Part shown: positions 1 to 59,603 of the stretch, in pieces
Position numbering within the stretch: position 1 is the first letter of the stretch
Layout of the letters: each line of letters starts with the position of its first letter
Assembly (NCBI GenBank): GCA_964019335.1
Contig: OZ025690.1
Span: forward strand, 248,001 to 312,000
Direction of reading: 5' to 3'
From: Diplonema japonicum
Lineage: Eukaryota; Protista; Euglenozoa: Diplonemea
DNA length: 64,000 bases
Position numbers and translations under genes: made by a program
The notes under the pieces: model-generated
The model's input: the letters and a program-made list of their open reading frames with translations, nothing else
The model's database searches: none
Told to the model about the DNA's origin: nothing

Positions 1-2414
1 GGGATGTCATCGTGTTTCAAAAGCATCTTTAACATTTTGAAATGCTTCGTCCCGCACGCCACGTGAAGAGCGGTGTTCTCAGAGGTGATCTCCTTCACGC
101 TGTCGAACATCGCTAAGACTTCCTCAAGCTTGTCAACATCAACGTTCTCCACATGCAGCATCCCGTTGTAGATCATCTGACATTGTTTTGGCGAGAACTT
201 GCACGATTTGATTAGTTTATACGCGTTCTGGTCGTCCTTCCTCGCCCAGTCTTCTCCTATGAAGACGCACGTGTCATCTTCCAAGGTGGTCCCGTACATC
301 TCCTGCATCTCTATCCTGGCTGCCCAGTCTCTTGTTTGATCCAGGTTTTTGCCGGTCGGAAGGCGTCGATTTAACAGATTGTTCAGATGTCCTTCGCGTA
401 TGCTGAATTTCTCGCACCAACCCGCCACTTGTGACTTAAACAACCCGGATAGCAGTATTGGGGTGAGGGCTATGGTCGCGATGGAGACAGCGAGAGCCCA
501 TGATCTCCCGTCGGCGGTGTCCCACGGCCGCAACGCAATGACAATCCCCAGGATTGAAAACAAAGCCTTCACGGTTAACGAGCCCATGCCGTGGTCGGAG
601 GTGTACAAGATGGAGTAGATCGATTCTGACCAATGCCTCTTCAAAACACCAGTTTCCAAAAAAACCTCCGCCGCAAGAAGCGCGAAAATAAACGCCAGGC
701 AGAGAATCCCGTACACATTCGCCAGATACACCCATGAGGCGGTGTGGCAGACAAAATCTAACATTCCAATGGCAACGAGGTATTTTTCAGCGGATGCTAT
801 TTTTTCAGGGATATCGACTGAGGAACAAGCGCGAAGTGCTATCCTCTTGCTGTCCATCACCAAGACTCCCAAGGGCGCGAACAACGCGGTGACGGCGGGC
901 AGCACATACAAGAAGTTTGATGAAATCGAGGATCCCGACACACAGCTTGCAAACACTGCCCGCGCCACACCCGGCACCAGGATCCAGTTGTTAAGCATCG
1001 TTGTTAGCGGTGTTTTTTGCGAGAAAAACCGGTAGATTTCAAGGTCGAAAAACTGGGCCACAGCACGGGTCCCTCCTTGCTTCATTGGAACCCACAACCA
1101 CAACGAGCTGAGCAATCCGTACACCACCTCAAAACCAACGATCAAAAACCCCGTTGAACTCCCTGCGTAAAATTCCTTCGCGGCGATAAACACCTCCACC
1201 AGCTTCGGTATCTGGTACACGGTACAGTACATGCTAAGCGTGCTGGTGGCAGTCTCCGTGACGCCAAAGACGTCTGGGTCGCCAAGGTCGTCCTGCTCGA
1301 TATCGTTGATGGCAAGCCCCTGGTACCCTCTGCTTTGAGCACCGCTTTTGCAGAGCAACCCTGCCACACATGGAAACACCCCCAATAGTAGTATACTTGC
1401 TGCCCCGACGATTATCCACGGGGTGTAGGCATTGTTTTTATCATGTTTACTAGTTTCCCCACTCGGTACCGGTGTTGTCGCTGGTACTGGGCTTGGGCTT
1501 GGTGTGTCTGGTGACATGGTTGTGGGCATGGGTGATGGTGCTGGTGGTGATGGCGTTGAAATCGGTATGATTGTCCCCGAGCCACCGGTGCATTTAAACA
1601 CCTTTTTACTACTGCACGCTGTTGGGTTGCTGCAGTGAACCGTTACGTTCTTGCAATGCGTGCCCGAGAAGACCGTCCCCGTGCAGCTTTGAGGGCCCTC
1701 GCAAAACAGGTTGTACTGCGCTAGACTGTTCACCGAGAACCTGTTGCCAATACACGCCTTGTTCGATTTGCAGTATACAGACACTGATGGATCGGCCTTG
1801 TTCGAAGGAAAGCTCCATGTGTTGTTATGGCAGACGTCCTCTGCCTCACAGTGGACCTCCCGAAGAACGCCTGGCCGTAGATTCTCCAGGGTGATTTGGT
1901 TGCTGGAGAAGGAACCCAGTGCGTTGCCCACTGTCACGTTGAAGAGATCGGCGTTATAGACACTGATTTGCATGTTGTTGCAAGACTCCTTTGAAAGGCA
2001 CGCCAGGTGAATTTTAGAGCTGTCTTCTGTTCTGAGTATTCCATGAAAGCAAGACTGTCCCTCGTTGCAGTTGAAATAAATATCTTTGAACCCATTCAGC
2101 GTGAAGTTCATCGCCGTCTGTTCATGCACTGTGACTAGCTCGGCCACCGCGTCTTTGTTCCCGTGTTGTCTGTCGATTTCGCCGATCACTATGAGCTTTG
2201 TGCAGGCTCCTTGAAAATTGCATTCGATCCTCAGTGAGCTCACCTCGACCGCCATCACCGTCAGGTGCTTGCAGTCCCCTTGCTCCTCACAGATCACGGT
2301 ACAGTTCTGATTCTTTTCGCAAGCTACAGTTTCGTTCTGTTTTGTTGGATAAATCGTCTGCCCGCCCACACCGACCGCTAACATCACCGCAATGCACACC
2401 CTGACCGTCCCCAT
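1..2414 (-). CDS. Large membrane protein (partial, runs off left edge): signal peptide, Cys-rich ectodomain, Pro/Thr linker, multiple TM helices, start of ankyrin repeats
   Basis: Manual translation from ATG 2414 (MGTVRVCIAVMLAVGVGG...) appears open to position 1 and ends in ...ENTALHVACGTKHFKMLKMLLKHDDIP (ankyrin motif). Absent from the ORF track because there is no stop in the window. Confidence 0.8.
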   Translation of the reverse strand, partial: MGTVRVCIAVMLAVGVGGQTIYPTKQNETVACEKNQNCTVICEEQGDCKHLTVMAVEVSSLRIECNFQGACTKLIVIGEIDRQHGNKDAVAELVTVHEQTAMNFTLNGFKDIYFNCNEGQSCFHGILRTEDSSKIHLACLSKESCNNMQISVYNADLFNVTVGNALGSFSSNQITLENLRPGVLREVHCEAEDVCHNNTWSFPSNKADPSVSVYCKSNKACIGNRFSVNSLAQYNLFCEGPQSCTGTVFSGTHCKNVTVHCSNPTACSSKKVFKCTGGSGTIIPISTPSPPAPSPMPTTMSPDTPSPSPVPATTPVPSGETSKHDKNNAYTPWIIVGAASILLLGVFPCVAGLLCKSGAQSRGYQGLAINDIEQDDLGDPDVFGVTETATSTLSMYCTVYQIPKLVEVFIAAKEFYAGSSTGFLIVGFEVVYGLLSSLWLWVPMKQGGTRAVAQFFDLEIYRFFSQKTPLTTMLNNWILVPGVARAVFASCVSGSSISSNFLYVLPAVTALFAPLGVLVMDSKRIALRACSSVDIPEKIASAEKYLVAIGMLDFVCHTASWVYLANVYGILCLAFIFALLAAEVFLETGVLKRHWSESIYSILYTSDHGMGSLTVKALFSILGIVIALRPWDTADGRSWALAVSIATIALTPILLSGLFKSQVAGWCEKFSIREGHLNNLLNRRLPTGKNLDQTRDWAARIEMQEMYGTTLEDDTCVFIGEDWARKDDQNAYKLIKSCKFSPKQCQMIYNGMLHVENVDVDKLEEVLAMFDSVKEITSENTALHVACGTKHFKMLKMLLKHDDI

Positions 2415-2536: not shown

Positions 2537-4912
2537 TCACGAAAGTAACGCCTCTTTAGATCTGTTGACATTGCTGACCTCGGCGTCTGCATCGTCGGTG
2601 TTGCGCAGCGGCATGTGGGTGCACAGATGGATGTAGTCCCTGTCGGTAGGGGCTGCAGTGGTATCGCTGTCTTGCAAAAGAGAAGCGGGCAACGCGTACC
2701 ACCCACCACCATAAGACCGTTTGCTTGGCTTGGCGTTGCAGAACCCCGTGGGGAGGGGCTCAGGTGTTGTGGGCAGAGTGGGTGCCGGGGAAGGTGTAAT
2801 GCGCAGCATGTGGTCCATCGGTGTCGTCACGCGTGTGGGCGGGCAGCTTGCTCCGCTAGCAGGACGCGTGCTCGGCATGCTAGGCGACTCTACTGGAGGT
2901 CTCGGTGACTTCCTTGTAAAGTGCCGCGTTGCGGTGTCAGCCACTCGTGCGCCCATCAACCTGTTTTCATAGTCAAAAGCAATAACCTCCCACCCCTTCT
3001 CCATCTCCTCCTCGTCCTGCCTTGACAGCGCGGACCTCGGTCTTGGGCTCGGCACATCCTCTGGGGATCCGGCCCCTGTGCCATGCCGCCTGTAACTGTA
3101 CTCAGCCCCGTTCTTCAGTTCGTCCTGTTTTTTCATACGCAGCTCCCTCCTGACCCGTTTCCATGCCAACTCCCTCTCTTCGATGGCGTGTTGCCGCTCT
3201 TGCACCCTCAACTTGCACATTTCTTGTTCGAGGTCGCTTGACTTCAAGATCTTCCGTACCTCGATGTCCTCCTCGTGCGTGTCGAGCTCCTCGAACGGTG
3301 CCTCCCACTGCGTCGCCTTCGCAAGGGTGGGCCAACGGACAGGGCCGCAAGAAGAATCGACAACATCTGGCGAGGGGCTGCAGCCTCTAGACACGGGGGT
3401 TGCCAATACGTCCACTACCGACCTCGTGGGCTCTTCGCGGGGTTCATCGCCGACGTGCCGTACCGACGAGGGGCATTCTTCTGCTGGCTGTGCTACGCGG
3501 CTTTCTTCACCTGTCTCCTGCATATCAAGCACCGGAAGGACCCGCCTGTGCGCAGTTACCCTCATCACTGTGTCAGGAGGGAGTGCAGACGCACACTCCG
3601 TTGAGTCGGTACTTTTACTTTCACTCACTACATCGTGCTCGGCTGGTACTACGGGTGTCTCAGTCGGCACGCTTGAGTTCAAACCCAAACCCATCCCCTG
3701 GGACACAGCGGCTTCATGTATTTCATTCACAACCACGACCTTAGTTGAGGCTGCACTCGACACAATACCTGTGTCCTGAGGTGTGTCACCTGAGCCGGCT
3801 GCATTGCTCTCGTTGGGAAGTGGCGGTTGTGGCGTGTCGAGAGGTGGTGGTGGTTGAGGCGCGTTGGGAGGCAACGGTTGTGGCGTGTCGAGAGGCAGCG
3901 GTTGTAGCGCTAGTTGTGGCGCGTTGAGAGATGGCGGTTGTGGCGTGTCGAGAGGTGGCGGTGGTTGTGGCGCGTTGGGAGGCAACGGTTGTGGCGGCGC
4001 TGACTGTCTCGTTTCTGCAGCCAGCCCAAGAGAAGGTGCATCATCTGCCTGTTCAGAACAGCTGTTGCCTTTACCCACTTTGCCTTTGAGAGGTGCCTTC
4101 GACTTCCGTCTTCCCATCGCGAACGGGTGCTTCCGCATGTCAGGCGCCCTCACCATCAGCCGACGGTTGTGCGCAGAGTTTCTGAAGGGTGCTTGTGGGG
4201 GGGAAGGTGCGTTTGTGTCTTCCTTGGTTGCCGATGGGATGCGAACGGTAACGGTGTGCTGCTTGTGAGAGGGCTTTCCCTTGCGCTTTCCCACGGCAAG
4301 CGCTTCCACCTGCCGTTGCGATTCTGCTAGAGCGGCTTTGTACTTAGATAACTTGGTGGCGTTCTCCTCGCGCAAGCGATGCAAAGCGTCGCGCTCTGTT
4401 CTCAGAACGATGACTTCTCGTGTGAGGTCTTTTGTCACATGCTGCGATTCTCCGGTTCCTTTAGAATACGGAGTGCATTGAACACCAACGGTTTTGTTGT
4501 TCTTGGCCAGAGGTCGCATGTAAAATGGTTCAGAACCATTCGTGTTGTGCAGATTCGATATCTTCTTAAGGTTTTCTGTTCTTTCAGCGTCGTAACGAAG
4601 CTGCCGGTAGTTTGCTTGTGCTCTCAAGCGGTCTTGTTCGGCCATCAGGGATTGGTTTTCTTTTCGCAGATGGGCCGCCTCGCTGTTCAGCTCTTCCAAC
4701 CCAACAAAGGATGCGTCTAGCTGTTGAACCAAATACCCTACGTGGCTGGGCTCTGCGCTCTTGCATGTCACTTCGCGCAAGATCTTCAGGTAGAACTCAT
4801 TAAGCAGGCTGTCGAAGATACTTCGTTTCGTGTAAATGTTTTGTTCCCCGCCGCGCATCAGCCTTCCCACTACCTGTACAATCTCGTCGATGGCGGTTTG
4901 CAAGGTGTCCAT
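2537..4912 (-). CDS. Hypothetical protein, N-terminal coiled coil, Pro-rich repeats, disordered C-terminus
   Basis: 791-aa ORF with GC-rich coding composition and A-rich context before the ATG. Confidence 0.8.
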   Translation of the reverse strand: MDTLQTAIDEIVQVVGRLMRGGEQNIYTKRSIFDSLLNEFYLKILREVTCKSAEPSHVGYLVQQLDASFVGLEELNSEAAHLRKENQSLMAEQDRLRAQANYRQLRYDAERTENLKKISNLHNTNGSEPFYMRPLAKNNKTVGVQCTPYSKGTGESQHVTKDLTREVIVLRTERDALHRLREENATKLSKYKAALAESQRQVEALAVGKRKGKPSHKQHTVTVRIPSATKEDTNAPSPPQAPFRNSAHNRRLMVRAPDMRKHPFAMGRRKSKAPLKGKVGKGNSCSEQADDAPSLGLAAETRQSAPPQPLPPNAPQPPPPLDTPQPPSLNAPQLALQPLPLDTPQPLPPNAPQPPPPLDTPQPPLPNESNAAGSGDTPQDTGIVSSAASTKVVVVNEIHEAAVSQGMGLGLNSSVPTETPVVPAEHDVVSESKSTDSTECASALPPDTVMRVTAHRRVLPVLDMQETGEESRVAQPAEECPSSVRHVGDEPREEPTRSVVDVLATPVSRGCSPSPDVVDSSCGPVRWPTLAKATQWEAPFEELDTHEEDIEVRKILKSSDLEQEMCKLRVQERQHAIEERELAWKRVRRELRMKKQDELKNGAEYSYRRHGTGAGSPEDVPSPRPRSALSRQDEEEMEKGWEVIAFDYENRLMGARVADTATRHFTRKSPRPPVESPSMPSTRPASGASCPPTRVTTPMDHMLRITPSPAPTLPTTPEPLPTGFCNAKPSKRSYGGGWYALPASLLQDSDTTAAPTDRDYIHLCTHMPLRNTDDADAEVSNVNRSKEALLS
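3825..3995 (-). repeat. Coding tandem repeat (PQPLPPNA / PQPPPPLDT units)
   Basis: Repeated ggttgtggcgtgtcgagagg / ggcgcgttgggaggcaac units on +. Confidence 0.85.
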
Positions 4913-7130: not shown

Positions 7131-8543
7131 TCAATTTTTCTTCAGTTTATTGTACTTTCCCATTGCTACTCTGTACGATTCGGCCTTTTCGTGCAGCGAC
7201 TTCACCGTGGCCTCCGACTCCCTCAGGGCACCAAAATCCTTCTCTTCAACCTTTTTTAACTTATGAAAAACGCTGATGTCGGTGGGGGTGAAATCCATCG
7301 ATGTCAAAACATGTCTCCACACGGCATCAATATCATGTGTTATAGGGGTCCCCCACGCGGTTTTAAAACAGTCCTCAAGACCGGAACGTAATATGTCCTC
7401 AAGGTATCGGTGCAAGTGCTGTCTGATCATGACACCGATTAAGAAATCGAGCGACGCGGAGAAAAGGAAGGAGTACAGAATAACAGGGGAAAAAGGGTCG
7501 TCTTCCTCAACGGATTGGAAAAGCCCTGCTAGAACACAGCATAGTGTGAAGGACACCAGGCAGATCAATGCAATGCACGTTCTGCGTCGTTTCCTCCCGC
7601 GGTACAGCATCTCGTTGCAGACTTTTGAAGCTATTTTAATTCGAAGAATGGCGTCCTCCGTCTGCTCGATGAGATTATCCGCGCGTTGCAACGGGACCTT
7701 TGAAATCTTTTGCAGCAAATCGGCTCTTTTTGCTTTGCATTCTTCCAACGCTGATTCCATTGTCTTCTGAACGGAAGTGGTGCGTTTTTGTTCTGTATAT
7801 ATTGTGTAGAACATTGGCGGTTCCTTTCTGGGAACGTATTTGGATAGGTTCCAGCAGAGTGTGCCGAATGTCATGACGAAGTCCTGCGTTGTTTGAAGTT
7901 TGTCGGTTTTGTTGAATATGTATCGAAGCTTGCCTTCCATTCCGGTTTTGAGAAGGTTTAACAGAACTTCTTGTTGTTCCCCACCTCCTGGTTTCTCCGG
8001 GTCGAACAGAAACAAAATAAGATCACTTCTTTCCGCGAACCATTGAATGCTCGCATGGACCGTTTCCTTTGAAAAAAGATCGTTTTCCACCGTTCCGAAG
8101 TCTGTTAAACCTGGTGTGTCGACGACGATTAGGTTTTCCGGAAAAGTTTCAGACTGTGAGTGTATTTTTTTCAGGCGAAGCCGGCCTTCTAAGCCCGGGC
8201 CGAACTGTCGTAAAGCTTCGAAACCGAGGTCAGGGTCGCTGATCACCGCGGAGCCCTTGATCTCGTTTTCTATTCCATCTCCGCTTTCTTTTAGTAGCAG
8301 TGTGAAGCCTGAGTCGGTTGGTGCCGCGCCCACATCTTGCTCGCCTTCTCTTTCGAGCACCGAGTTGATAAATGTCGACTTGCCACTTGAGTAGTTCCCG
8401 ATGACTAGGATCATGGGGTACTTGCATCGCTCCTTCGTCCTCACGATGTTCCACTGGTCCTGTGGTTTTAAAACCCTGTTGTAGCAGTCCTCGATTTCAT
8501 GCTCAATTTCGCGGAGCTCGCTGGCTCCTGCGGTGGGGGGCAT
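7131..8543 (-). CDS. EHD/dynamin-like P-loop NTPase with two C-terminal TM helices
   Basis: GNYSSGKST, APTDSGFT, VVDTPG, WFAERSDLILFLFDP and NKTD motifs; likely start MPPTAG at 8543 after an A-run. Confidence 0.85.
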   Translation of the reverse strand: MPPTAGASELREIEHEIEDCYNRVLKPQDQWNIVRTKERCKYPMILVIGNYSSGKSTFINSVLEREGEQDVGAAPTDSGFTLLLKESGDGIENEIKGSAVISDPDLGFEALRQFGPGLEGRLRLKKIHSQSETFPENLIVVDTPGLTDFGTVENDLFSKETVHASIQWFAERSDLILFLFDPEKPGGGEQQEVLLNLLKTGMEGKLRYIFNKTDKLQTTQDFVMTFGTLCWNLSKYVPRKEPPMFYTIYTEQKRTTSVQKTMESALEECKAKRADLLQKISKVPLQRADNLIEQTEDAILRIKIASKVCNEMLYRGRKRRRTCIALICLVSFTLCCVLAGLFQSVEEDDPFSPVILYSFLFSASLDFLIGVMIRQHLHRYLEDILRSGLEDCFKTAWGTPITHDIDAVWRHVLTSMDFTPTDISVFHKLKKVEEKDFGALRESEATVKSLHEKAESYRVAMGKYNKLKKN

Positions 8544-19555: not shown

Positions 19556-19648
19556 GATTGCAACACTAGGTGGCGTTAAGCGTGCAACAAAAAAAAAAAA
19601 AAAAAAAAAGAGACATTTAAGGGTACCTGCGGTATGTGGCAGGACGCC
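19556..19648 (-). mobile_element. Chained orphan retroelement-like 3' tails (tail 3, poly-T, tail 2)
   Basis: 19610-19648 equals 23759-23797; 19556-19588 equals the 3' ends of the elements at 40512 and 41451. Confidence 0.7.
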
Positions 19649-26707: not shown

Positions 26708-27274
26708 TCTATTTTTTTTTTTTTTTTTTTCCTTTTTTGTTTCTAACCAAAGGTTTGTGTTGTGAAACATGAAACAAAAGATGGAGAAGCAAACATGAAC
26801 GTTCTTTCGTTGTGCGGGAGGGAAAAAGAGATAGGGGAAAGGAAAGAAAAAAATTGGGAAAAAACAGTCTAACTTTGTTAAATGGTGGTGGTAAAGGGTA
26901 AGAAGCGAGAAGGAAATCAGATTGTTAACAGAAATAGTCTACGTAAATAAAGAAGAAGGTTTGCGAGAGGAAGGAAAGGACAATAAAAGAAAAAATCGTC
27001 GGATAAAATTCTTCTTAGAAAGGGCTTCATTCTCCTTCACATCAAGGTGCCACAAGGTGACGGCCCCTTTAAGGGAGTAGAAGAGAAAAGCAAAGAAAAA
27101 GGCCAATCTGAGTCGACAGTCGGCTCCAAAGTGTACCATAAAGCACTAGTAGCACATGGGGTGGTTTACGACACATTTCGAGTGCGCTTCGAATCTGTGG
27201 TCACCACTCAGACATGTTAACGCTGCCAAATATTCTTTTTGAAACAACAATAAAAGTGTTTCTAAAAGAATAAA

Positions 27275-27631
27275 TTCACTATGATAGGAACGAAGTGGTT
27301 AGCAACGGCTACCGCCAATAAATTATATACAAGAGTTGAAGGAGGCCGGTGTTGGCGGCGCCCTGCACCAGAACTGTCTACTTGATCACAGAGGCGCACC
27401 GTAGCCGAGTTGTAGCTTCTTCTGCGTCCGCATCGTGTCCTTAATGCGTGCAGTGTGCAGTTCAACCCTAGCCGGGGCGTCCCGGGTAACCAAGATTAGG
27501 CGCTCATGCAGTTTGCTACCTGTTCTTCGTCACTCTTCGACTCAGGCGCTACCGGTGATAACTGACGTGGAGGTCAACAGCGAATAACACATTTGATGTA
27601 CTTCTTATATTCCCATGTTGTCCCCACCACC
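27275..27631 (-). mobile_element. SINE-like family A element (degenerate HDV-like ribozyme head, LINE tail 1)
   Basis: Homologous to 40545-40828 but ends in gttgctaaccacttcgttcctatcatagtgaa, the 3' end of the LINE at 34880. Confidence 0.8.
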
Positions 27632-34452: not shown

Positions 34453-34879
34453 TTCTTTTTTTCTTCTTTTTTTTTTTTGTTGTCGTGTGTTTTTTTTTTT
34501 TTACCTTTTTTTTATTTTGAATTTTTTTTTTTTTTGGTGTGATATTGGTAAATAAAGAAAATTGAAGGGGATGGGGGGGGAGCCTTAAAATATATAATAT
34601 AATAACGGGGGGTGTGGGGGTGTATACAAATAAAATGAACAGGTTTTTTTTTCTTTTTTTTTCCCCTTCCTTTTTTTTTTCTTCTCTGATAAAAAAAAAA
34701 GTGCATTTCTTATTTCCATGTGTGGAAGAAGGGGGGGGGGGGTAAAACAAAGATAAAAAAATAGATTGAGGGAAATGGTGGGGTGAATAGAATGCAGCGA
34801 AGGAGAAAAAAAAATGAATGAAACAATGCCATTTTACCGGGGCACGGGTACAAAGAAAGAAGAAAAAAAAGAAAGAAAA

Positions 34880-36760
34880 TTCACTATGATAGGAACGAAG
34901 TGGTTAGCAACCCTTTTGGGGTCGTTCCCTGCTACCCACCGTAGTGCCTAGCTGTCGTTTATATCTTCCAATCCTTTCTTTCCGGTAATCTTCTCTCAGT
35001 CCTTTCAGCTTCGCCGTCAGCCCCGATGCAAACAGGGCCCTCCTATCAAAGCCAACGACGTGGTCGCGGCCAATGGATCGTAGTGATCTCACGTTCTTGC
35101 ATGACTGCGCCGGAAAAGCGCGTCTCCTCTTCTCCCTCATCCATGTCGCTTGCAGCGTATCCAGGATCCGCTTGATCCTCACCGCCTTCTTGTCGATGTC
35201 AATCGTCGTGTTGATGTTAACCCCCAGCGTCTTCTTCGTGTAGCACTCGAAGTCAATCGCCAGCTCGATCGCCGACACGGACGTTCCCTCCTCCGCCCAC
35301 CGCAGCGCAGCCAGCCATCTCAGCACCTGATCACCATACTCCCTGAGCTGCGGGGTCAGCTTGAGCTTGTACAGTTCCACAACCTTTGGCGCCTCGAAAC
35401 GCCTTCCTTGAGTCGTCACCATCCACGGCGGTTCCTTCTCAACCGCGAACCGCTTCACCACCAGAGCATCGTCCCTGCGCCTCACCACCTCTGCCAAATA
35501 CCTCTGCAGCCTCTCCAAACCGCGGAACACGACCTTCCTCGGGAGAATCCCGTGCAGCTCCAAACAGACCGGCCACCTTTCGCTCCTGACCAGACCGGTA
35601 TATACCTCCTTCTTCTGCACCTCCAATGCGACCTCGCACTCCCAAAGCTGGTGTCGCAGCAACCTAACTGTGCTGCCCTTCGCAGCATCACAGACATCGC
35701 AATTGAGCGTTCCCGCTGCTTTGTCCGTCCTCCCCCTATCCAGGTGGTCGGCTTCTTCCTCGCTCCCTTCACCTCCCTCCTCATCAGGTTCTTCAGGAGG
35801 GGAGAGTAAAACTTGTTTCGCATACGGGCTGAGGTACGGCACCGCCCCGGCGATTATCCTCCTCACCCGCCACGCTTCGAGCGGTCTGCGTGCGCTGCAC
35901 TTCATCCAGTAAGCGTTCGTTGCAGGGGCCGCGCCCTTCCCAAGCCCGGCCATCGTGCTTCGCGTCTTCACAATACCCGATGTCCTCATCCTCCGCAGAG
36001 CCTCCCTGAGGTCGTGCCCAGGATTCTCTCCTCTGTGCCAGCTTGCCAGCCTTTCCCACTTACCCGATCGCCGGGAGCCACCTCAGAAGCACATTTCCTA
36101 CGACCCCCCTCGGCCTCACCTGCCCAGAAGTTCCGTACGCCTGTGCCAACTGCGTCCATGTTGCCATTGCCCCGTCCTGCCTCAGCCAGCACCTCCTCAG
36201 CATCATCAAAGCACTGTACACTACGGCACACAGCGGGTCCACCCGGTGCGCTCGCGCCAGGATTGACAGTACCACGTCTGGAGATCTTCCTCTGTAGTGG
36301 GGGCCCCACAGGCACTTCACGATCGATCCTTTAAGCTGACTGAGACTCTAGTCACTCGGCGGAGAGAAGCTCGAGCTGTATAGCAGTCCCGGCATAATAT
36401 GAGTTCTGATGAGACTCTCCTTCCTCTGAAAAGAGAGCTGGGTCGAAGCCAGCCTTTCCACTTTCTGTCTTGCAGTAACCGCGGCATCGTTCCAGCTCGT
36501 GCCGCATGCTGTCGTGTTCAGCATAGTTCCCAAGGCCTTATGCTTGTCGACCTTGTTGAGCCTTACCTTCCTTCTTCTTCCGTCCACCTCACTATCCTCC
36601 TCGCAGTTGAGGTCCCCAATCACCACGATCGGCACGTCTCCCAGCTCTATTCGCTTCCTGACCAGAATGTGATGCAGAAGTTGCTCCCGTTCCCTGGCTT
36701 GCACTGCCTCATTGCCAGCTGGTCAGTAGACGTTCAAGAAAAGAAACCACACCCATGCAC
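34880..36760 (-). mobile_element. Internally deleted, decayed APE-type LINE
   Basis: APE remnants LNVY.P and PIVVIGDLN fused directly to post-RT thumb-like KALG...LIRTHIMPGLLY; CDVC...HQLWEC knuckle; ELAIDFE; tail 1 at 34880-34911. Confidence 0.8.
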
Positions 36761-39572: not shown

Positions 39573-40274
39573 TCACCTTCGCAGCAACTGGCTATACCGG
39601 GTTGGGGTAGTTGTACTGAAGGGCCGAGGTGTGTTCCGCACAGGGGTGTTGCATGCCCGTTCAATCTTTTTTTTTTTTTTTTTTTTTTTTTTTCCCCAAC
39701 ACACCAATTTATAAACCTCCCTCACCTCCGGTGATGCTATAGACGCCACCGAGACACGGTGATGACTGGGGGTCAGAAACGCTTTTTTTTCTCTTTCCTT
39801 TTCTTTTTCCCTCTCTCTCCGCTTAACGGCGGCTGCAGCATCTGCCTTTAGTGCTTTCTTCACAATGTCAGCACCAGTTGTGCAGCGTTGAGGTAGAAGA
39901 GGCGTGGCAGGGGGCGTCGATGACCTTGACTGTGCACATAGAGATCTTCGTGATCCAGCAGGTGGAGGCGTCATGGTCCGTCGGTTTCGAGATTCAAGTT
40001 TTGTAGGTGTCAACGGAAGTTTCATTTGTGTGACCTTCTCTTCTTCGGCCTCCTGCAGCGCTTCGACCAGCGCGAAATTTAAAGGGAATCCCCTCTCTGG
40101 CTCACGGCAGAGGGCCCTGCAGCAAGGGCAGCTTACGGAACAATCCCCTTTCCGCCTCTTCATCACCATCGACAGGCATTTGCTGCAAAGCGTGTGCCCG
40201 CAGCCAAGCAACCTCGGCAGTCGGGCGTAAGGCTCGGTCGCATAACTCACCAAGCACACCGGGCATTCTGGCAT
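39573..40274 (-). CDS. RING-finger protein (probable in-frame intron 39666-39716)
   Basis: CPVC...PRLLGCGHTLCSKC...CPCCR...NFAL. Confidence 0.88.
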   Translation of the reverse strand: MPECPVCLVSYATEPYARLPRLLGCGHTLCSKCLSMVMKRRKGDCSVSCPCCRALCREPERGFPLNFALVEALQEAEEEKVTQMKLPLTPTKLESRNRRTMTPPPAGSRRSLCAQSRSSTPPATPLLPQRCTTGADIVKKALKADAAAAVKRREREKEKEREKKAFLTPSHHRVSVASIASPEVREVYKLVCWGKKKKKKKKKIERACNTPVRNTPRPFSTTTPTRYSQLLRR

Positions 40275-40511
40275 TTTCTTTTTTTTTTTTTTTTTCTCCC
40301 AAAATGGGCTGAACACCCACCCTCCCCCAGCGCCTTCTGTGATAAAAGGTAATGTGAAGATAACGAATAGAAAAAGAAATGGGGGGAGGGGGGACAAAGT
40401 AAAATAATAGTATGGGGGAAAACTTTTTTTTTAAAATCCCCCCCATTTTTTTTTTTTTTTTTTTTTTACTTAATAAAATCCGGAGAAAAAGAAAAAGGAA
40501 AAAAAAATGGG

Positions 40512-40828
40512 GATTGCAACACTAGGTGGCGTTAAGCGTGCAATGAAGCACGAACTACCTACTTGATTACAGGGGGCGCTCCTCGGCCGAGCAGTAGCTT
40601 CTTCTGCGTTCCGCGTCGTGTCCTTAATGCGTGCGGTGTGCTCAACCCTAGCCGGGGCGTCCCGGGTAACCAAGATTCTGCGCTCGTGCAGTTTGCTGCC
40701 TGTTCGTCACCCTGAGCATCTGCGTTACGTCCTTCCACTCAGGCGCTACCGGTGATGACCGACGAGGAGGTCAACAGCGAACAACACATCTGATGTACTT
40801 CTTATATTTTCATGTTATCCCCACCACC
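40512..40828 (-). mobile_element. SINE-like family A element, most intact copy (HDV-like ribozyme head, tail 2)
   Basis: Homologous to the 27275, 41451 and 42362 copies; all four start at GGTGGTG. Confidence 0.85.
40691..40828 (-). ncRNA. Predicted HDV-like self-cleaving ribozyme (family A)
   Basis: P1 GGTGGTG/CATCACC; P2 GCTGTTG/CAG(G)CAGC; P3 ACC/GGT; L3 TCCTCGTC; P1.1 CC/GG; P4 CCTGAG...CTCAGG; J4/2 ACGAA with catalytic-C equivalent at 40706. Folded by hand. Confidence 0.8.
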
Positions 40829-41106: not shown

Positions 41107-41450
41107 TGAGCAAGGTTTTTTTTTTTAAAAAAAAGGAAAAGTATTACCATAGTTTTTTTTCTTCTTTTTGCGGGGTGAAAGTGTTTTGAGTAACGGCCTA
41201 TCACCCCCCCCCCCCCCCCCCCCATCTGAAAGAACTCGTTTTTTTTTTCCAAACCGCCCCAGGCTTGTGGCACACCAGTCCACCCGAAAATACACACACA
41301 TTCTCAGTACCACTACTACCCATGCTTTTTTTTTTTTTTTTTTTTTTTTTTGTCATCCCCGCCGCCCTCCCTACACGGTTTTCATGAAACCGAACAACGC
41401 AGTCTCTGTAGAAAGGGGGGGAAAAAGGGGGGGATACAAATAGGGCTTTT

Positions 41451-41663
41451 GATTGCAACACTAAGTGGCGTTAAGCGTGCAACGAACTAACTACTTGATT
41501 ATATGGGGGCGCACCGCGGCCGAGCTGTAGCTTCTTTCTGCGTTCCGCGTCGTGTCCTTAATGCGTGCGGTGTGTAATTACCGGTGATGACCGACGAAGA
41601 GGTCAACAGCGAACAACATATATTTGATGTACTTCTTTATATTTCCATGTTATCCCCACCACC
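41451..41663 (-). mobile_element. SINE-like family A element with internal deletion, tail 2
   Basis: Same head and tail as 40512-40828; P4 to P2' and part of the body missing. Confidence 0.8.
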
Positions 41664-42156
41664 TTAAAAAAAATCAAATTCAAAGGAGGGGGGGGGGGGG
41701 GGGAGAAGAAAATCAGTAGGGGAAAACAGGGATGAAACGACCAAAAAAAAAAAAAAAAAAGAAGAAAAAAAAAAGGAAAAAACTTTTCTTTCCCCTTTCC
41801 AAATCTTTTGTATAAAATGTATGGAATGTTCTTTTTTTTTTTTTTAAGGTTTCCTTCTTGTGGGAGGGCGTGCTAAAAGAAATAAATGATTTTTTTTTTT
41901 TTGTTCCCTTTCGTTCTTAGAGACCAAATACTTATTTTTTTTTCTTTTTTTCCCGTCTGCTTTTTTCTGTGAAGACCAAGCAGTGATCAAAAGCATGTCT
42001 GAGAGACTACACCCCACAGAACCTTGCAGCGCACATGTGGAGTGGGCGAAATTCATAAAAAAAAAAAAAAAAGGAAATTGTTGATTCTCTAAAATATTTT
42101 TTACCCCATTCTTACATTTTTCCTTTCCCCCAAAGAGGCGTTTATACGTGACCTTT

Positions 42157-42361: not shown

Positions 42362-42471
42362 CTGTAGCTTCTTCTGCACCCTGAGCATCTGCAATACGTT
42401 CTTCCACTAGGGTGCTACCGGTGATGAAAACACCTGATGTATTTCTTTACATCTCCGTGTTATCCACCACC
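42362..42471 (-). mobile_element. Degenerate family A fragment
   Basis: GGTGGTG start, catcaccggtagc, gcagatgctcagggtg and gcagaagaagctac retained. Confidence 0.7.
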
Positions 42472-55197: not shown

Positions 55198-55854
55198 CTC
55201 AAAGTACAGGACAAACCCCCCGCTAGAGGGCCGCCCTATGGGAGGGGGGGGGGGGCCTATCTGTTAATACTCCCCTTCTGGAGCATTGCTTTCATCCCGA
55301 TTGAAGCCGTGAGCGTCTCGCGGAGTCGTGTGATGCGGTCCCGCTTGTAGTCGGCTTTCAATTCCATTAGCTTGTCGTGCGTGGAGCGGGTGGCGAAAAT
55401 AGGCCTCCTGGAGAAACCAATAGCTGCCTTTCCTCCAATGGCGATGAGGGAAAAAAGTTGTCTCGATTTTAGTGGTGCCATGCAGTATGTGACACAGCGG
55501 CCACCCTTGTGAAACTTCGCCCCGAAGCCTCCCAAGTCCCCTGTGGTCCCGTAGAAAGTAAAAGTGGAGAGGTAAAGAAAGCTTGGAAATTGAAATAGGG
55601 AGAGGGGCCACAGAAGCAATTAAACCGGGAGGCTACTTGCCTGACCTGGTGAAGCCACCTCCTTGTCCGATGTAATGGGATAGGGACTCTCCGTTGAGGG
55701 CGATGCTAACTGGCGCCACGCGTAGGGCTCTCCACCCCCGTCCAGGTTTCCCCACGTGTACGTCTTTAGAACGAGAGTTTCCCTTTCGCTTGTGTTTCTC
55801 CAAACCACAATTACCAGGAACCACCACAGGGAGGTTGGAAACATTCGTCCCCCC
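55198..55854 (-). mobile_element. Non-autonomous LINE derivative, family B (HDV-like ribozyme head, UTR-like body, LINE 3' end with tail 4)
   Basis: 3' ~250 nt nearly identical to 23324-23570; 5' end folds as an HDV-like ribozyme. Confidence 0.75.
55777..55852 (-). ncRNA. Predicted HDV-like ribozyme (family B, compact)
   Basis: P1 GGGGAC/GTTCCT with G1-U wobble; P2 GTTTCC/GGAAAC; P3 ACC/GGT; L3 TCCCTGT; P1.1 GG; P4 TTGT(G)GTTT-GGAG-AAACACAA; J4/2 GCGAA with C at 55788. Confidence 0.75.
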
Positions 55855-59536: not shown

Positions 59537-59552
59537 TTAAAAAAAAAAAAGA

Positions 59553-59603
59553 TTTTCACTATGATAGGAACGAAGTGGTTAGCAACGGCCCGCCAAAAGG
59601 GGG
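59553..59603 (-). mobile_element. ~50-nt tail-1 retro-insertion with target-site duplication
   Basis: Flanked by direct repeats ggtagatggttaaaaaaaaa..ga (from 59528 and 59604). Confidence 0.75.

What the first reader, a model, noticed from the sequence alone, without database searches (positions are those of the whole stretch)
40512..40828. SINE-like family that starts exactly at G1 of an HDV-like self-cleaving ribozyme
Seen: four related minus-strand copies (5' ends at 27631, 40828, 41663 and 42471) all begin GGTGGTG. The 40828 copy folds by hand into the full HDV nested double pseudoknot: P1 GGTGGTG/CATCACC, ~40-nt J1/2, P2 GCTGTTG/CAG(G)CAGC, P3 ACC/GGT, L3 TCCTCGTC, P1.1 CC/GG, P4 CCTGAG..CTCAGG, J4/2 ACGAA. 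Known: HDV-like ribozymes define the 5' ends of R2 and of trypanosomatid L1Tc/ingi/SIDER2 elements. Inference: in a polycistronic genome, self-cleavage replaces a promoter and releases the ~320-nt RNA from host read-through transcripts. This fits all copies being co-oriented with the genes. The sequence does not resemble the Pr77 signature as I recall it.
Basis: partly seen in the sequence, partly recalled or inferred. Interest (0 to 1): 0.92.

Follow-up and report, generated by a model that had tools for sequence, protein, structure and literature searches.

The report
SINE family headed by HDV-like ribozyme
A short mobile element present in over a thousand copies in this diplonemid-like protist genome begins exactly at the first base of a hepatitis-delta-virus-type self-cleaving RNA fold, which probably cuts the element's RNA out of long host transcripts; the principle is known from other retrotransposons, but not from this lineage or sequence family.

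Summary
The element is a 326-nt retroposon on the minus strand (window copy 40508-40828). The genome search gave 1416 first-look candidates (a loose count), and the 40 scored copies are 93-100% identical. All 30 copies examined start at GGTGGTG (one GGTGATG). Nucleotides 1-134 fit the full HDV-like nested double pseudoknot, with L3 UCCUCG and C123 (40706) two bases after P4. A consensus-based descriptor found only these heads and one LINE head in 308 kb, and nothing in ten shuffles. Orientation is settled by 5'-truncated tail-only copies with target-site duplications, and by one tail being the 3' end of a LINE. These are APE+RT LINEs of about 2035 aa. They start with their own HDV-like fold, with different P1, P2 and P4 but the same P3/L3 core, and they end in a T-run, not poly(A). 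A third head family also exists. The host is diplonemid-like, not trypanosomatid, and two Pr77 hallmark motifs are absent. Not shown: cleavage, RNA 5' ends, covariation within the SINE, or any Rfam match. Other first readers of this scan noted the same family elsewhere in this genome. Verdict: a new member of a known kind; interest 0.5.

The parts
40508..40828 (-). Full-length copy of the SINE (family consensus 326 nt; this copy lacks 5 nt, AAAGC, near its 3' end)
40695..40828 (-). HDV-like ribozyme domain, element nt 1-134. Window coordinates: P1 40822-40828 / 40751-40757; J1/2 40779-40821; P2 40772-40778 / 40695-40702; P3 40769-40771 / 40758-40760; L3 40761-40768; P1.1 40766-40767 with 40749-40750; P4 40708-40745; J4/2 40703-40707
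40706..40706 (-). Putative catalytic cytosine (C123), two nt after P4 and followed by GAA and P2, as in HDV and CPEB3 (comparison from memory)
   Evidence: HDV/CPEB3 reference sequences recalled, not tool-derived
40544..40694 (-). Body of unknown origin. No tRNA, 7SL, 5S or rRNA match, and no similarity to the sampled LINEs
40508..40543 (-). 3' tail A (TTGCACGC..GCAATC(AAAG)CCCCA). It folds into a stem-loop and also occurs as isolated 5'-truncated fragments
40480..40507 (-). T-rich tract directly after the 3' end; target-derived, no poly(A)
27264..27631 (-). Older copy, 82% identical over nt 1-277, with a different 3' tail B (27264-27318). Its ribozyme is decayed: C123A, P4 deletion, G69A
41443..41663 (-). 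Copy with an internal deletion of nt ~83-188; head and tail are kept, J4/2 and P2 3' are lost
42364..42471 (-). Degenerate head fragment that lacks P2-L3
19548..19592 (-). 5'-truncated insertion made of the last ~45 nt (tail A) between T-runs
59544..59596 (-). 5'-truncated tail-B fragment with an unambiguous TSD (T-run + AACCATCTACC) and 8 extra nt at its 5' junction. This fixes the orientation
34867..36200 (-). 5'-truncated LINE remnant. ORF 34904-35989 is similar to the C-terminus of the ~2035-aa APE+RT LINEs. Its stop codon and short 3' UTR are tail B, followed by a T-run

Best explanation
This is a non-autonomous non-LTR retroposon with three parts: a ribozyme head (nt 1-134), a body of unknown origin, and a 35-55-nt tail borrowed from a LINE.

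Shown:
- The ends are exact.
- The target-site duplications are T-rich, 7-20 bp, and begin with the T-run.
- There is no poly(A) tail.
- 0-4 extra nt, mostly A, lie before G1.
- Tail B equals the 3' end of a LINE.
- The related APE+RT LINEs end in a specific tail plus a T-run, and begin with an HDV-like fold of their own.

Inferred:
- Copies sit in gene-sense orientation inside polycistronic units and are transcribed by read-through.
- The HDV-like domain folds co-transcriptionally and C123 cleaves 5' of G1, giving a 5'-OH RNA that starts at the element's first base.
- The LINE protein recognises the tail, nicks the A-run of the antisense strand, and primes reverse transcription there.

This would explain insertion into sense-strand polypyrimidine tracts and the orientation bias.
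For: - Boundary at G1 in 30 of 30 copies.
- Complete HDV architecture. L3 UCCUCG is identical to HDV genomic L3 over its first six nt (comparison with HDV from memory). C sits at +2 after P4, followed by GAA and P2.
- Descriptor specificity.
- The HDV fold is energetically competitive: -28.1 kcal/mol for the nested part plus about -6.5 for P2, against a nested MFE of -31.2.
- Independent realisations of the same architecture at other retroposon 5' ends. The L048 LINE has P1 GGGGCU/GGCCCU with G1.U, P2 CUGGGGA/UCCCCAG and P3/L3 ACC-UCCACGU-GGU. L049 is 79% identical and has a C-G to U-A swap in P4.
- A third head family in L046 was picked up by a model built only from SINE heads.
- Orientation and LINE partnership.
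- L007 carries G5A, which turns a G.U pair into A-U.
- No variant at 10% frequency or more falls in P1, P2, P3, L3 or J4/2 in four runs from three related organisms.
Against: - No biochemical or RNA-end evidence exists.
- G1 pairs with C78 rather than forming the G.U wobble typical of HDV and CPEB3 (from memory).
- The 43-nt J1/2 and competing nested folds could slow folding. The 165-nt MFE is not better than shuffles (z = +0.76).
- No Rfam HDV-type family matches even at E <= 10.
- The young copies are so similar that conservation of the core is not statistically informative (about P = 0.06).
- The SINE-derived model does not significantly detect the L048 head (5.9 bits).
- The partner LINE for tail A was not found.
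- The descriptor was written after seeing the candidate.
Confidence: 0.7

Rival explanations
1. The HDV-like fold is an inherited relic of a LINE head and is not what defines the SINE RNA. The 5' end at G1 is instead a transcription start set by an internal promoter, Pol II as in Pr77 or Pol III, with cleavage weak or dispensable.
For: Pr77 of L1Tc is both promoter and ribozyme (PMC3185411, PMC4748587). The G1-C78 pair is atypical. There is no RNA evidence. A T-run directly after the 3' end could act as a Pol III terminator.
Against: No tRNA-, 7SL- or 5S-like head was found. The Pr77 hallmarks CCACC and CGTG are absent. Every catalytic-core feature is intact in the young copies, while old copies have lost them. 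Three unrelated head sequences keep the same architecture exactly at element 5' ends.
Confidence: 0.2
2. The resemblance to an HDV ribozyme is a chance hand-fold.
For: The descriptor is post hoc, and there is no Rfam hit.
Against: Shuffles gave 1 hit in 60 and 0 in 10. All real hits start at the first base of a retroposon. Two further head families show the same architecture.
Confidence: 0.03
3. The element is really a plus-strand poly(A) SINE (TGGGGCTTT...CCACCACC + A-run), and GGTGGTG is only the complement of its 3' end.
For: A-runs on the plus strand flank both ends.
Against: TSDs abut ..CACC with no tail in that orientation (L003/L004, L010). Tail-only fragments with TSDs would then be 3'-truncated, which target-primed reverse transcription does not produce. 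Tail B is the sense-strand 3' end of a LINE ORF.
Confidence: 0.01

Closest known systems
L1Tc/NARTc (and ingi/RIME, SIDER) of trypanosomatids, with the Pr77 / L1TcRz HDV-like ribozyme
   Same: There is an HDV-like fold at nt +1 of an APE-type LINE and of its short non-autonomous partner. The hosts are euglenozoans with polycistronic transcription. The proposed role is release from read-through transcripts (PMC3185411, PMC4035085).
   Different: The host is diplonemid-like, not a trypanosomatid. The ribozyme is 134 nt with a 43-nt J1/2 instead of 77 nt. The Pr77 motifs CCACC (16-20) and CGTG (25-28) are absent. There is no poly(A). Insertion is into T-tracts. The SINE is a composite of head, unrelated body and LINE tail, not a simple internal deletion.
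R2 ribozyme and R2-derived SIDEs
   Same: The HDV-like ribozyme is long (~184 nt in R2), defines the 5' end from a co-transcript, and is shared by non-autonomous derivatives. The 3' end is recognised without poly(A) (PMC6765202, PMC3414825).
   Different: R2 has a restriction-like endonuclease and is specific for the 28S gene. Here the LINE has an APE domain and targets dispersed T-runs, and copy number is in the thousand range.
HDV genomic and CPEB3 ribozymes
   Same: The nested double pseudoknot is the same. The L3 motif U-Y-C-N-C-G, the 3-bp P3, the 2-bp P1.1 and C-GAA before P2 all match (comparison from memory of those sequences).
   Different: The first pair is G1-C instead of a G1.U wobble (the LINE heads do have G1.U). 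J1/2 is long with its own hairpin. P2 has a bulged G. No Rfam model matches.
Schistosoma Sm-alpha SINE (hammerhead) and twister-variant retrotransposons
   Same: A self-cleaving ribozyme is an integral part of a SINE or LINE (PMC6765202, PMC8501958).
   Different: The ribozyme class is different, and the Schistosoma SINE has a Pol III promoter.

Membership tests
HDV-like self-cleaving ribozymes | Nested double pseudoknot in the order P1-P2-P3-L3-P3'-P1'-P1.1-P4-J4/2-P2', with the cleavage site at the 5' end of P1 | tested here: met
   All helices are present with standard pairs. The descriptor hit is unique in the window. G1 is the first base of the element.
HDV-like self-cleaving ribozymes | Catalytic cytosine in J4/2 | tested here: met
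   C123 (40706) lies in A-C-GAA between P4 and P2. It is present in the young copies and changed to A in the decayed copy 27631.
HDV-like self-cleaving ribozymes | L3 core (U..CG giving the reverse wobble, and CC for P1.1) | tested here: met
   L3 is UCCUCGUC, and C62 and C63 pair with G80 and G79.
HDV-like self-cleaving ribozymes | G1.U wobble closing P1 (typical, not universal; from memory) | tested here: not met
   The SINE has G1-C78. The L048/L049 LINE heads have G1.U.
HDV-like self-cleaving ribozymes | Covariation supporting the helices | tested here: inconclusive
   Inside the SINE there is only G5A (G.U to A-U). L048 against L049 shows one C-G to U-A swap in P4. Across the three head families P1, P2 and P4 differ completely yet still pair, but homology of individual columns is uncertain.
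HDV-like self-cleaving ribozymes | Match to a curated covariance model (Rfam) | tested here: not met
   No HDV, CPEB3 or drz family matched at E <= 10 on the SINE or on the LINE head.
HDV-like self-cleaving ribozymes | Mg2+-dependent self-cleavage yielding a 5'-OH | not testable with these tools
   Only assembled contigs of public runs were available, and none is on record as RNA.
SINE (non-autonomous non-LTR retroposon) | Short, non-coding, dispersed and high-copy, with TSDs and a LINE-derived 3' tail | tested here: met
   1416 first-look candidates. TSDs of 7-20 bp. Tail B equals a LINE 3' end. The tail A partner was not found.
SINE (non-autonomous non-LTR retroposon) | Internal Pol III promoter head derived from tRNA, 7SL or 5S | tested here: not met
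   ARAGORN found nothing, and there was no Rfam match. The head is a ribozyme instead.
Pr77-hallmark elements (L1Tc/ingi clade) | Pr77 signature with CCACC at 16-20 and CGTG at 25-28 | tested here: not met
   The SINE has ATGAA and TAAG at those positions.

The most novel reading that the evidence does not exclude
In diplonemid-like euglenozoans a whole retroposon community may run on HDV-like ribozymes. At least three head families unrelated in helix sequence are involved: this SINE, a ~2035-aa APE LINE whose start codon lies inside J1/2, and a third family. These are combined with an unusual poly(A)-independent integration primed at T/A-tracts. The SINE would then be a separate design, with a ribozyme head instead of a Pol III promoter, that exploits polycistronic transcription. 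It would place over a thousand potential self-cleavage sites next to trans-splicing signals, where they could shape mRNA processing.
Probability: 0.4. Interest if true: 0.7.

Novelty: new member of a known kind. Interest (0 to 1): 0.5.

Why it matters
HDV-like ribozymes at retrotransposon 5' ends are established for R2, L1Tc/NARTc and others, so the principle is not new. Three things are new. The lineage is new: diplonemid transposable elements are essentially uncharacterised (PMC10161547). The sequence family is new and very abundant, with copies still 98-99% identical, which suggests recent activity. The setting is also new: a composite SINE without a Pol III head, paired with T-tailed LINEs that insert into polypyrimidine tracts. 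The family gives a clean system for testing ribozyme-dependent SINE biogenesis in a polycistronic genome, and it provides three natural ribozyme variants for comparison.

Tried and rejected
- Rfam, at gathering threshold on the window and at E <= 10 on the SINE and the LINE head, gave no ribozyme family.
- A loose first descriptor produced only homopolymer artefacts and was replaced.
- Public reads: 8 runs hold the locus, but all are Logan contigs and none is on record as RNA, so 5' ends and expression could not be read. Only copy variation was usable.
- The metagenome scan with the core pattern returned 80 hits, all chance matches in contigs of about 68% GC.
I did not try to get round it.
- blastn of the SINE against 10 LINE loci found nothing. 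The poly(A)-tailed LINE families (L044, L045) are not partners.
- My first reading that tail A ends the LINE-like ORF in L021 was wrong. That ORF belongs to a young LINE ending 233 nt upstream.
- The model built from SINE heads does not significantly detect the L048 head.
- The plus-strand poly(A) SINE reading was considered and rejected.
- The trypanosomatid assumption was rejected by protein homology.

Full report
**What is there.** On the minus strand, the sequence from 40828 downward reads GGTGGTG followed by 319 further bases and then a T-rich tract. blastn inside the window finds related pieces at 27371-27631, 41451-41671, 42377-42427 and 19556-19587. In the whole assembly (62.5 Mb, 132 contigs) the 317-nt query has 1416 first-look candidates. 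Of the 41 scored matches, 40 are 98-100% identical and one is 93%. Thirty copies fetched with flanks all share sequence from G1 onward (one has GGTGATG) and share nothing before it. At the other end they all run to ..GCAATCAAAGCCCCA, so the family unit is 326 nt. The window copy has lost AAAGC and ends at 40508.

**Ends, target and orientation.**
- Both flanks are T-rich on the element's strand.
- Informative target-site duplications directly abut the 3' CCCCA. Examples are TATCTTTT in L003/L004, TTTCTTTTTTT in L010, T9A in L005 and T7AAA in L002. There is therefore no poly(A) or obligatory tail.
- 0-4 extra nt, mostly A, lie between the 5' duplication and G1.
- Orientation cannot be read from a tail, so I used truncation and LINE homology.
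- Short fragments holding only the last 35-55 nt occur between T-runs. One of them, 59544-59596, has an unambiguous duplication (T-run + AACCATCTACC) and 8 extra nt at its upstream junction. Target-primed reverse transcription gives 5'-truncated copies, not 3'-truncated ones, so the CCCCA end is the 3' end.
- The alternative tail of the 27631 copy (tail B) is 93% identical over 45 nt to the stop codon plus short 3' UTR of a 5'-truncated LINE at 34867-36200(-). That LINE's ORF matches the C-terminus of the LINE ORFs in L048 and L049 by tblastx, with E-values of 1e-42 and 3e-45.

**The fold.** Element nt 1-134 give the following:

| Part | Sequence or position |
|---|---|
| P1 | GGUGGUG / CAUCACC |
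| J1/2 | 43 nt, with its own hairpin |
| P2 | GCUGUUG / CAG(G)CAGC |
| P3 | ACC / GGU |
| L3 | UCCUCGUC |
| P1.1 | C62, C63 with G80, G79 |
| P4 | CGCCCGAG / CUC(A)GGGUG in the family consensus (the window copy has U88, which pairs with A116) |
| J4/2 | ACGAA, with C123 at window 40706 |

- The L3 hexamer and the C-GAA-P2 arrangement equal those I recall for HDV and CPEB3.
- A descriptor built on those shared features found one hit in the window, at 40828, against one hit in 60 dinucleotide shuffles.
- A slightly more general version, run on all 308.5 kb of this genome that I hold, found 31 SINE heads and one LINE head and nothing else. It found nothing in ten shuffles.
- With P1, P3 and P4 enforced the RNA reaches -28.1 kcal/mol, against a nested optimum of -31.2. 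P2 would add about -6.5.

**Comparative support.**
- The LINEs that end like the SINE, with a specific tail then a T-run, encode one ORF of about 2035 aa with APE and RT domains.
- L048 is full length, with a duplication of T10AA, and starts GGGGCUGG.
- Its first ~115 nt fold as P1 GGGGCU/GGCCCU (G1.U), a ~45-nt J1/2 that contains the ORF's AUG, P2 CUGGGGA/UCCCCAG, P3 ACC/GGU, L3 UCCACGU, P1.1 GG, P4 UCCCCUCC/GGGGGGGA, and GCAAAC before P2.
- L049 is 79% identical. Its homology with L048 begins exactly at G1, and it keeps every helix, with one C-G to U-A swap in P4. Its L3 reads UCCAAGU.
- I cross-matched head hits to RT hits. Of 11 L048-type copies, 8 have the head within a few nt of 3.70 kb upstream of the RT match (3692-3698 nt); the other three lie at 3467, 3673 and 3799 nt. 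In 5 L049-type copies the distance is 3724-3726 nt.
- A covariance model built only from SINE heads recovered the four window copies. It also found a third head type in L046 at 8302-8427 (19.4 bits, E = 0.022) and at 8070-8191, directly after a LINE poly(A). This type has ACC-UCCACGGU-GGU, P2 GCUGCC/GGCAGC and its own P1 and P4.
- That third head has about 29 genomic candidates. Where an RT hit lies downstream on the same strand, it is 1.5-4.2 kb away, at no fixed distance.
- The architecture is thus realised three times with different helices, each time at the first base of a retroposon.

**What is not shown.**
- No Rfam HDV-type model matches.
- The SINE model scores the L048 head at only 5.9 bits.
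- The first pair is G1-C78, not the usual wobble.
- Young copies are too alike for conservation to be informative. Variants at 10% frequency or more fall in J1/2, P4 and the body and never in the core, but that is only about P = 0.06.
- Decayed copies have lost core features, as expected after insertion.
- All public runs holding the locus are contigs with no RNA on record, so cleavage and expression remain untested.

**Context.**
- Window proteins occur only in a EukProt transcriptome. Their best named relatives are from Diplonema papillatum (71%), while kinetoplastids reach about 40-45%.
- Diplonemids have unidirectional gene clusters and spliced-leader trans-splicing, and their transposable elements are hardly described (PMC10161547).
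- 17 of 19 independent loci with a flanking ORF of 250 aa or more have the SINE in the gene's orientation. Targeting of sense-strand T-tracts explains this bias without invoking selection.
- The Pr77 hallmark motifs are absent.

**Verdict.** The structural reading is well supported by computation, and the catalytic and biogenesis steps remain inferences. The thing is a new member, in a new lineage, of the known class of HDV-like-ribozyme-headed non-LTR retroposons.

Noticed in passing
L049:530-615 (G000:C2 ~150530-150615): Just upstream of the L049 LINE 5' end lies a spliced-leader-RNA-gene-like sequence (..CAGTTTCTGTACTTTATTG|GTACCC..), preceded by an A42 run. The LINE may sit beside or inside an SL RNA gene.
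   Followed up: no
L044:7640-7712: A tRNA-like gene (GGCGAGATGGCCGAGCGG..GGTTCAAACCCC..), followed by a T-run, lies about 30 nt upstream of the ORF1 start of a poly(A)-tailed LINE copy. This suggests possible tRNA-gene targeting or promoter borrowing.
   Followed up: no
L046:8070-8430: Two tandem HDV-like heads, 80% identical and of a third family, lie directly after a LINE poly(A). Between them P2 changes from U.G to C-G, and P4 is completely different but still pairs.
   Followed up: partly
L048:8919-9088(-) and L049:682-840: The start codon of the LINE ORF lies inside J1/2 of its ribozyme, and the ORF reads through P2, P3, L3, P1 and P4. The same bases therefore serve as coding sequence and as catalytic core.
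   Followed up: partly
L050:21-782 and 7264-8031: Direct repeats of about 770 bp flank a 1963-aa RT-containing ORF, an LTR-like arrangement. The same 770 bp also occurs in L043, L047 and L052.
   Followed up: no
L021:~478-1000(-): A young LINE family (355 first-look candidates, 97-99% identical among near-full matches, many 5'-truncated) ends in ..ATAGATCGAG + T15. It is another T-tailed subfamily of the same clade.
   Followed up: partly
window 40398-40507: The SINE's 3' T-tract lies about 100 nt upstream of the start codon of the RING-finger gene (39573-40397, minus strand). It could serve as that gene's polypyrimidine tract for trans-splicing.
   Followed up: no
window 55198-55854: Another first-reader note proposes a second, unrelated HDV-like head here. 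Neither of my descriptors nor model R1 hit it.
   Followed up: partly
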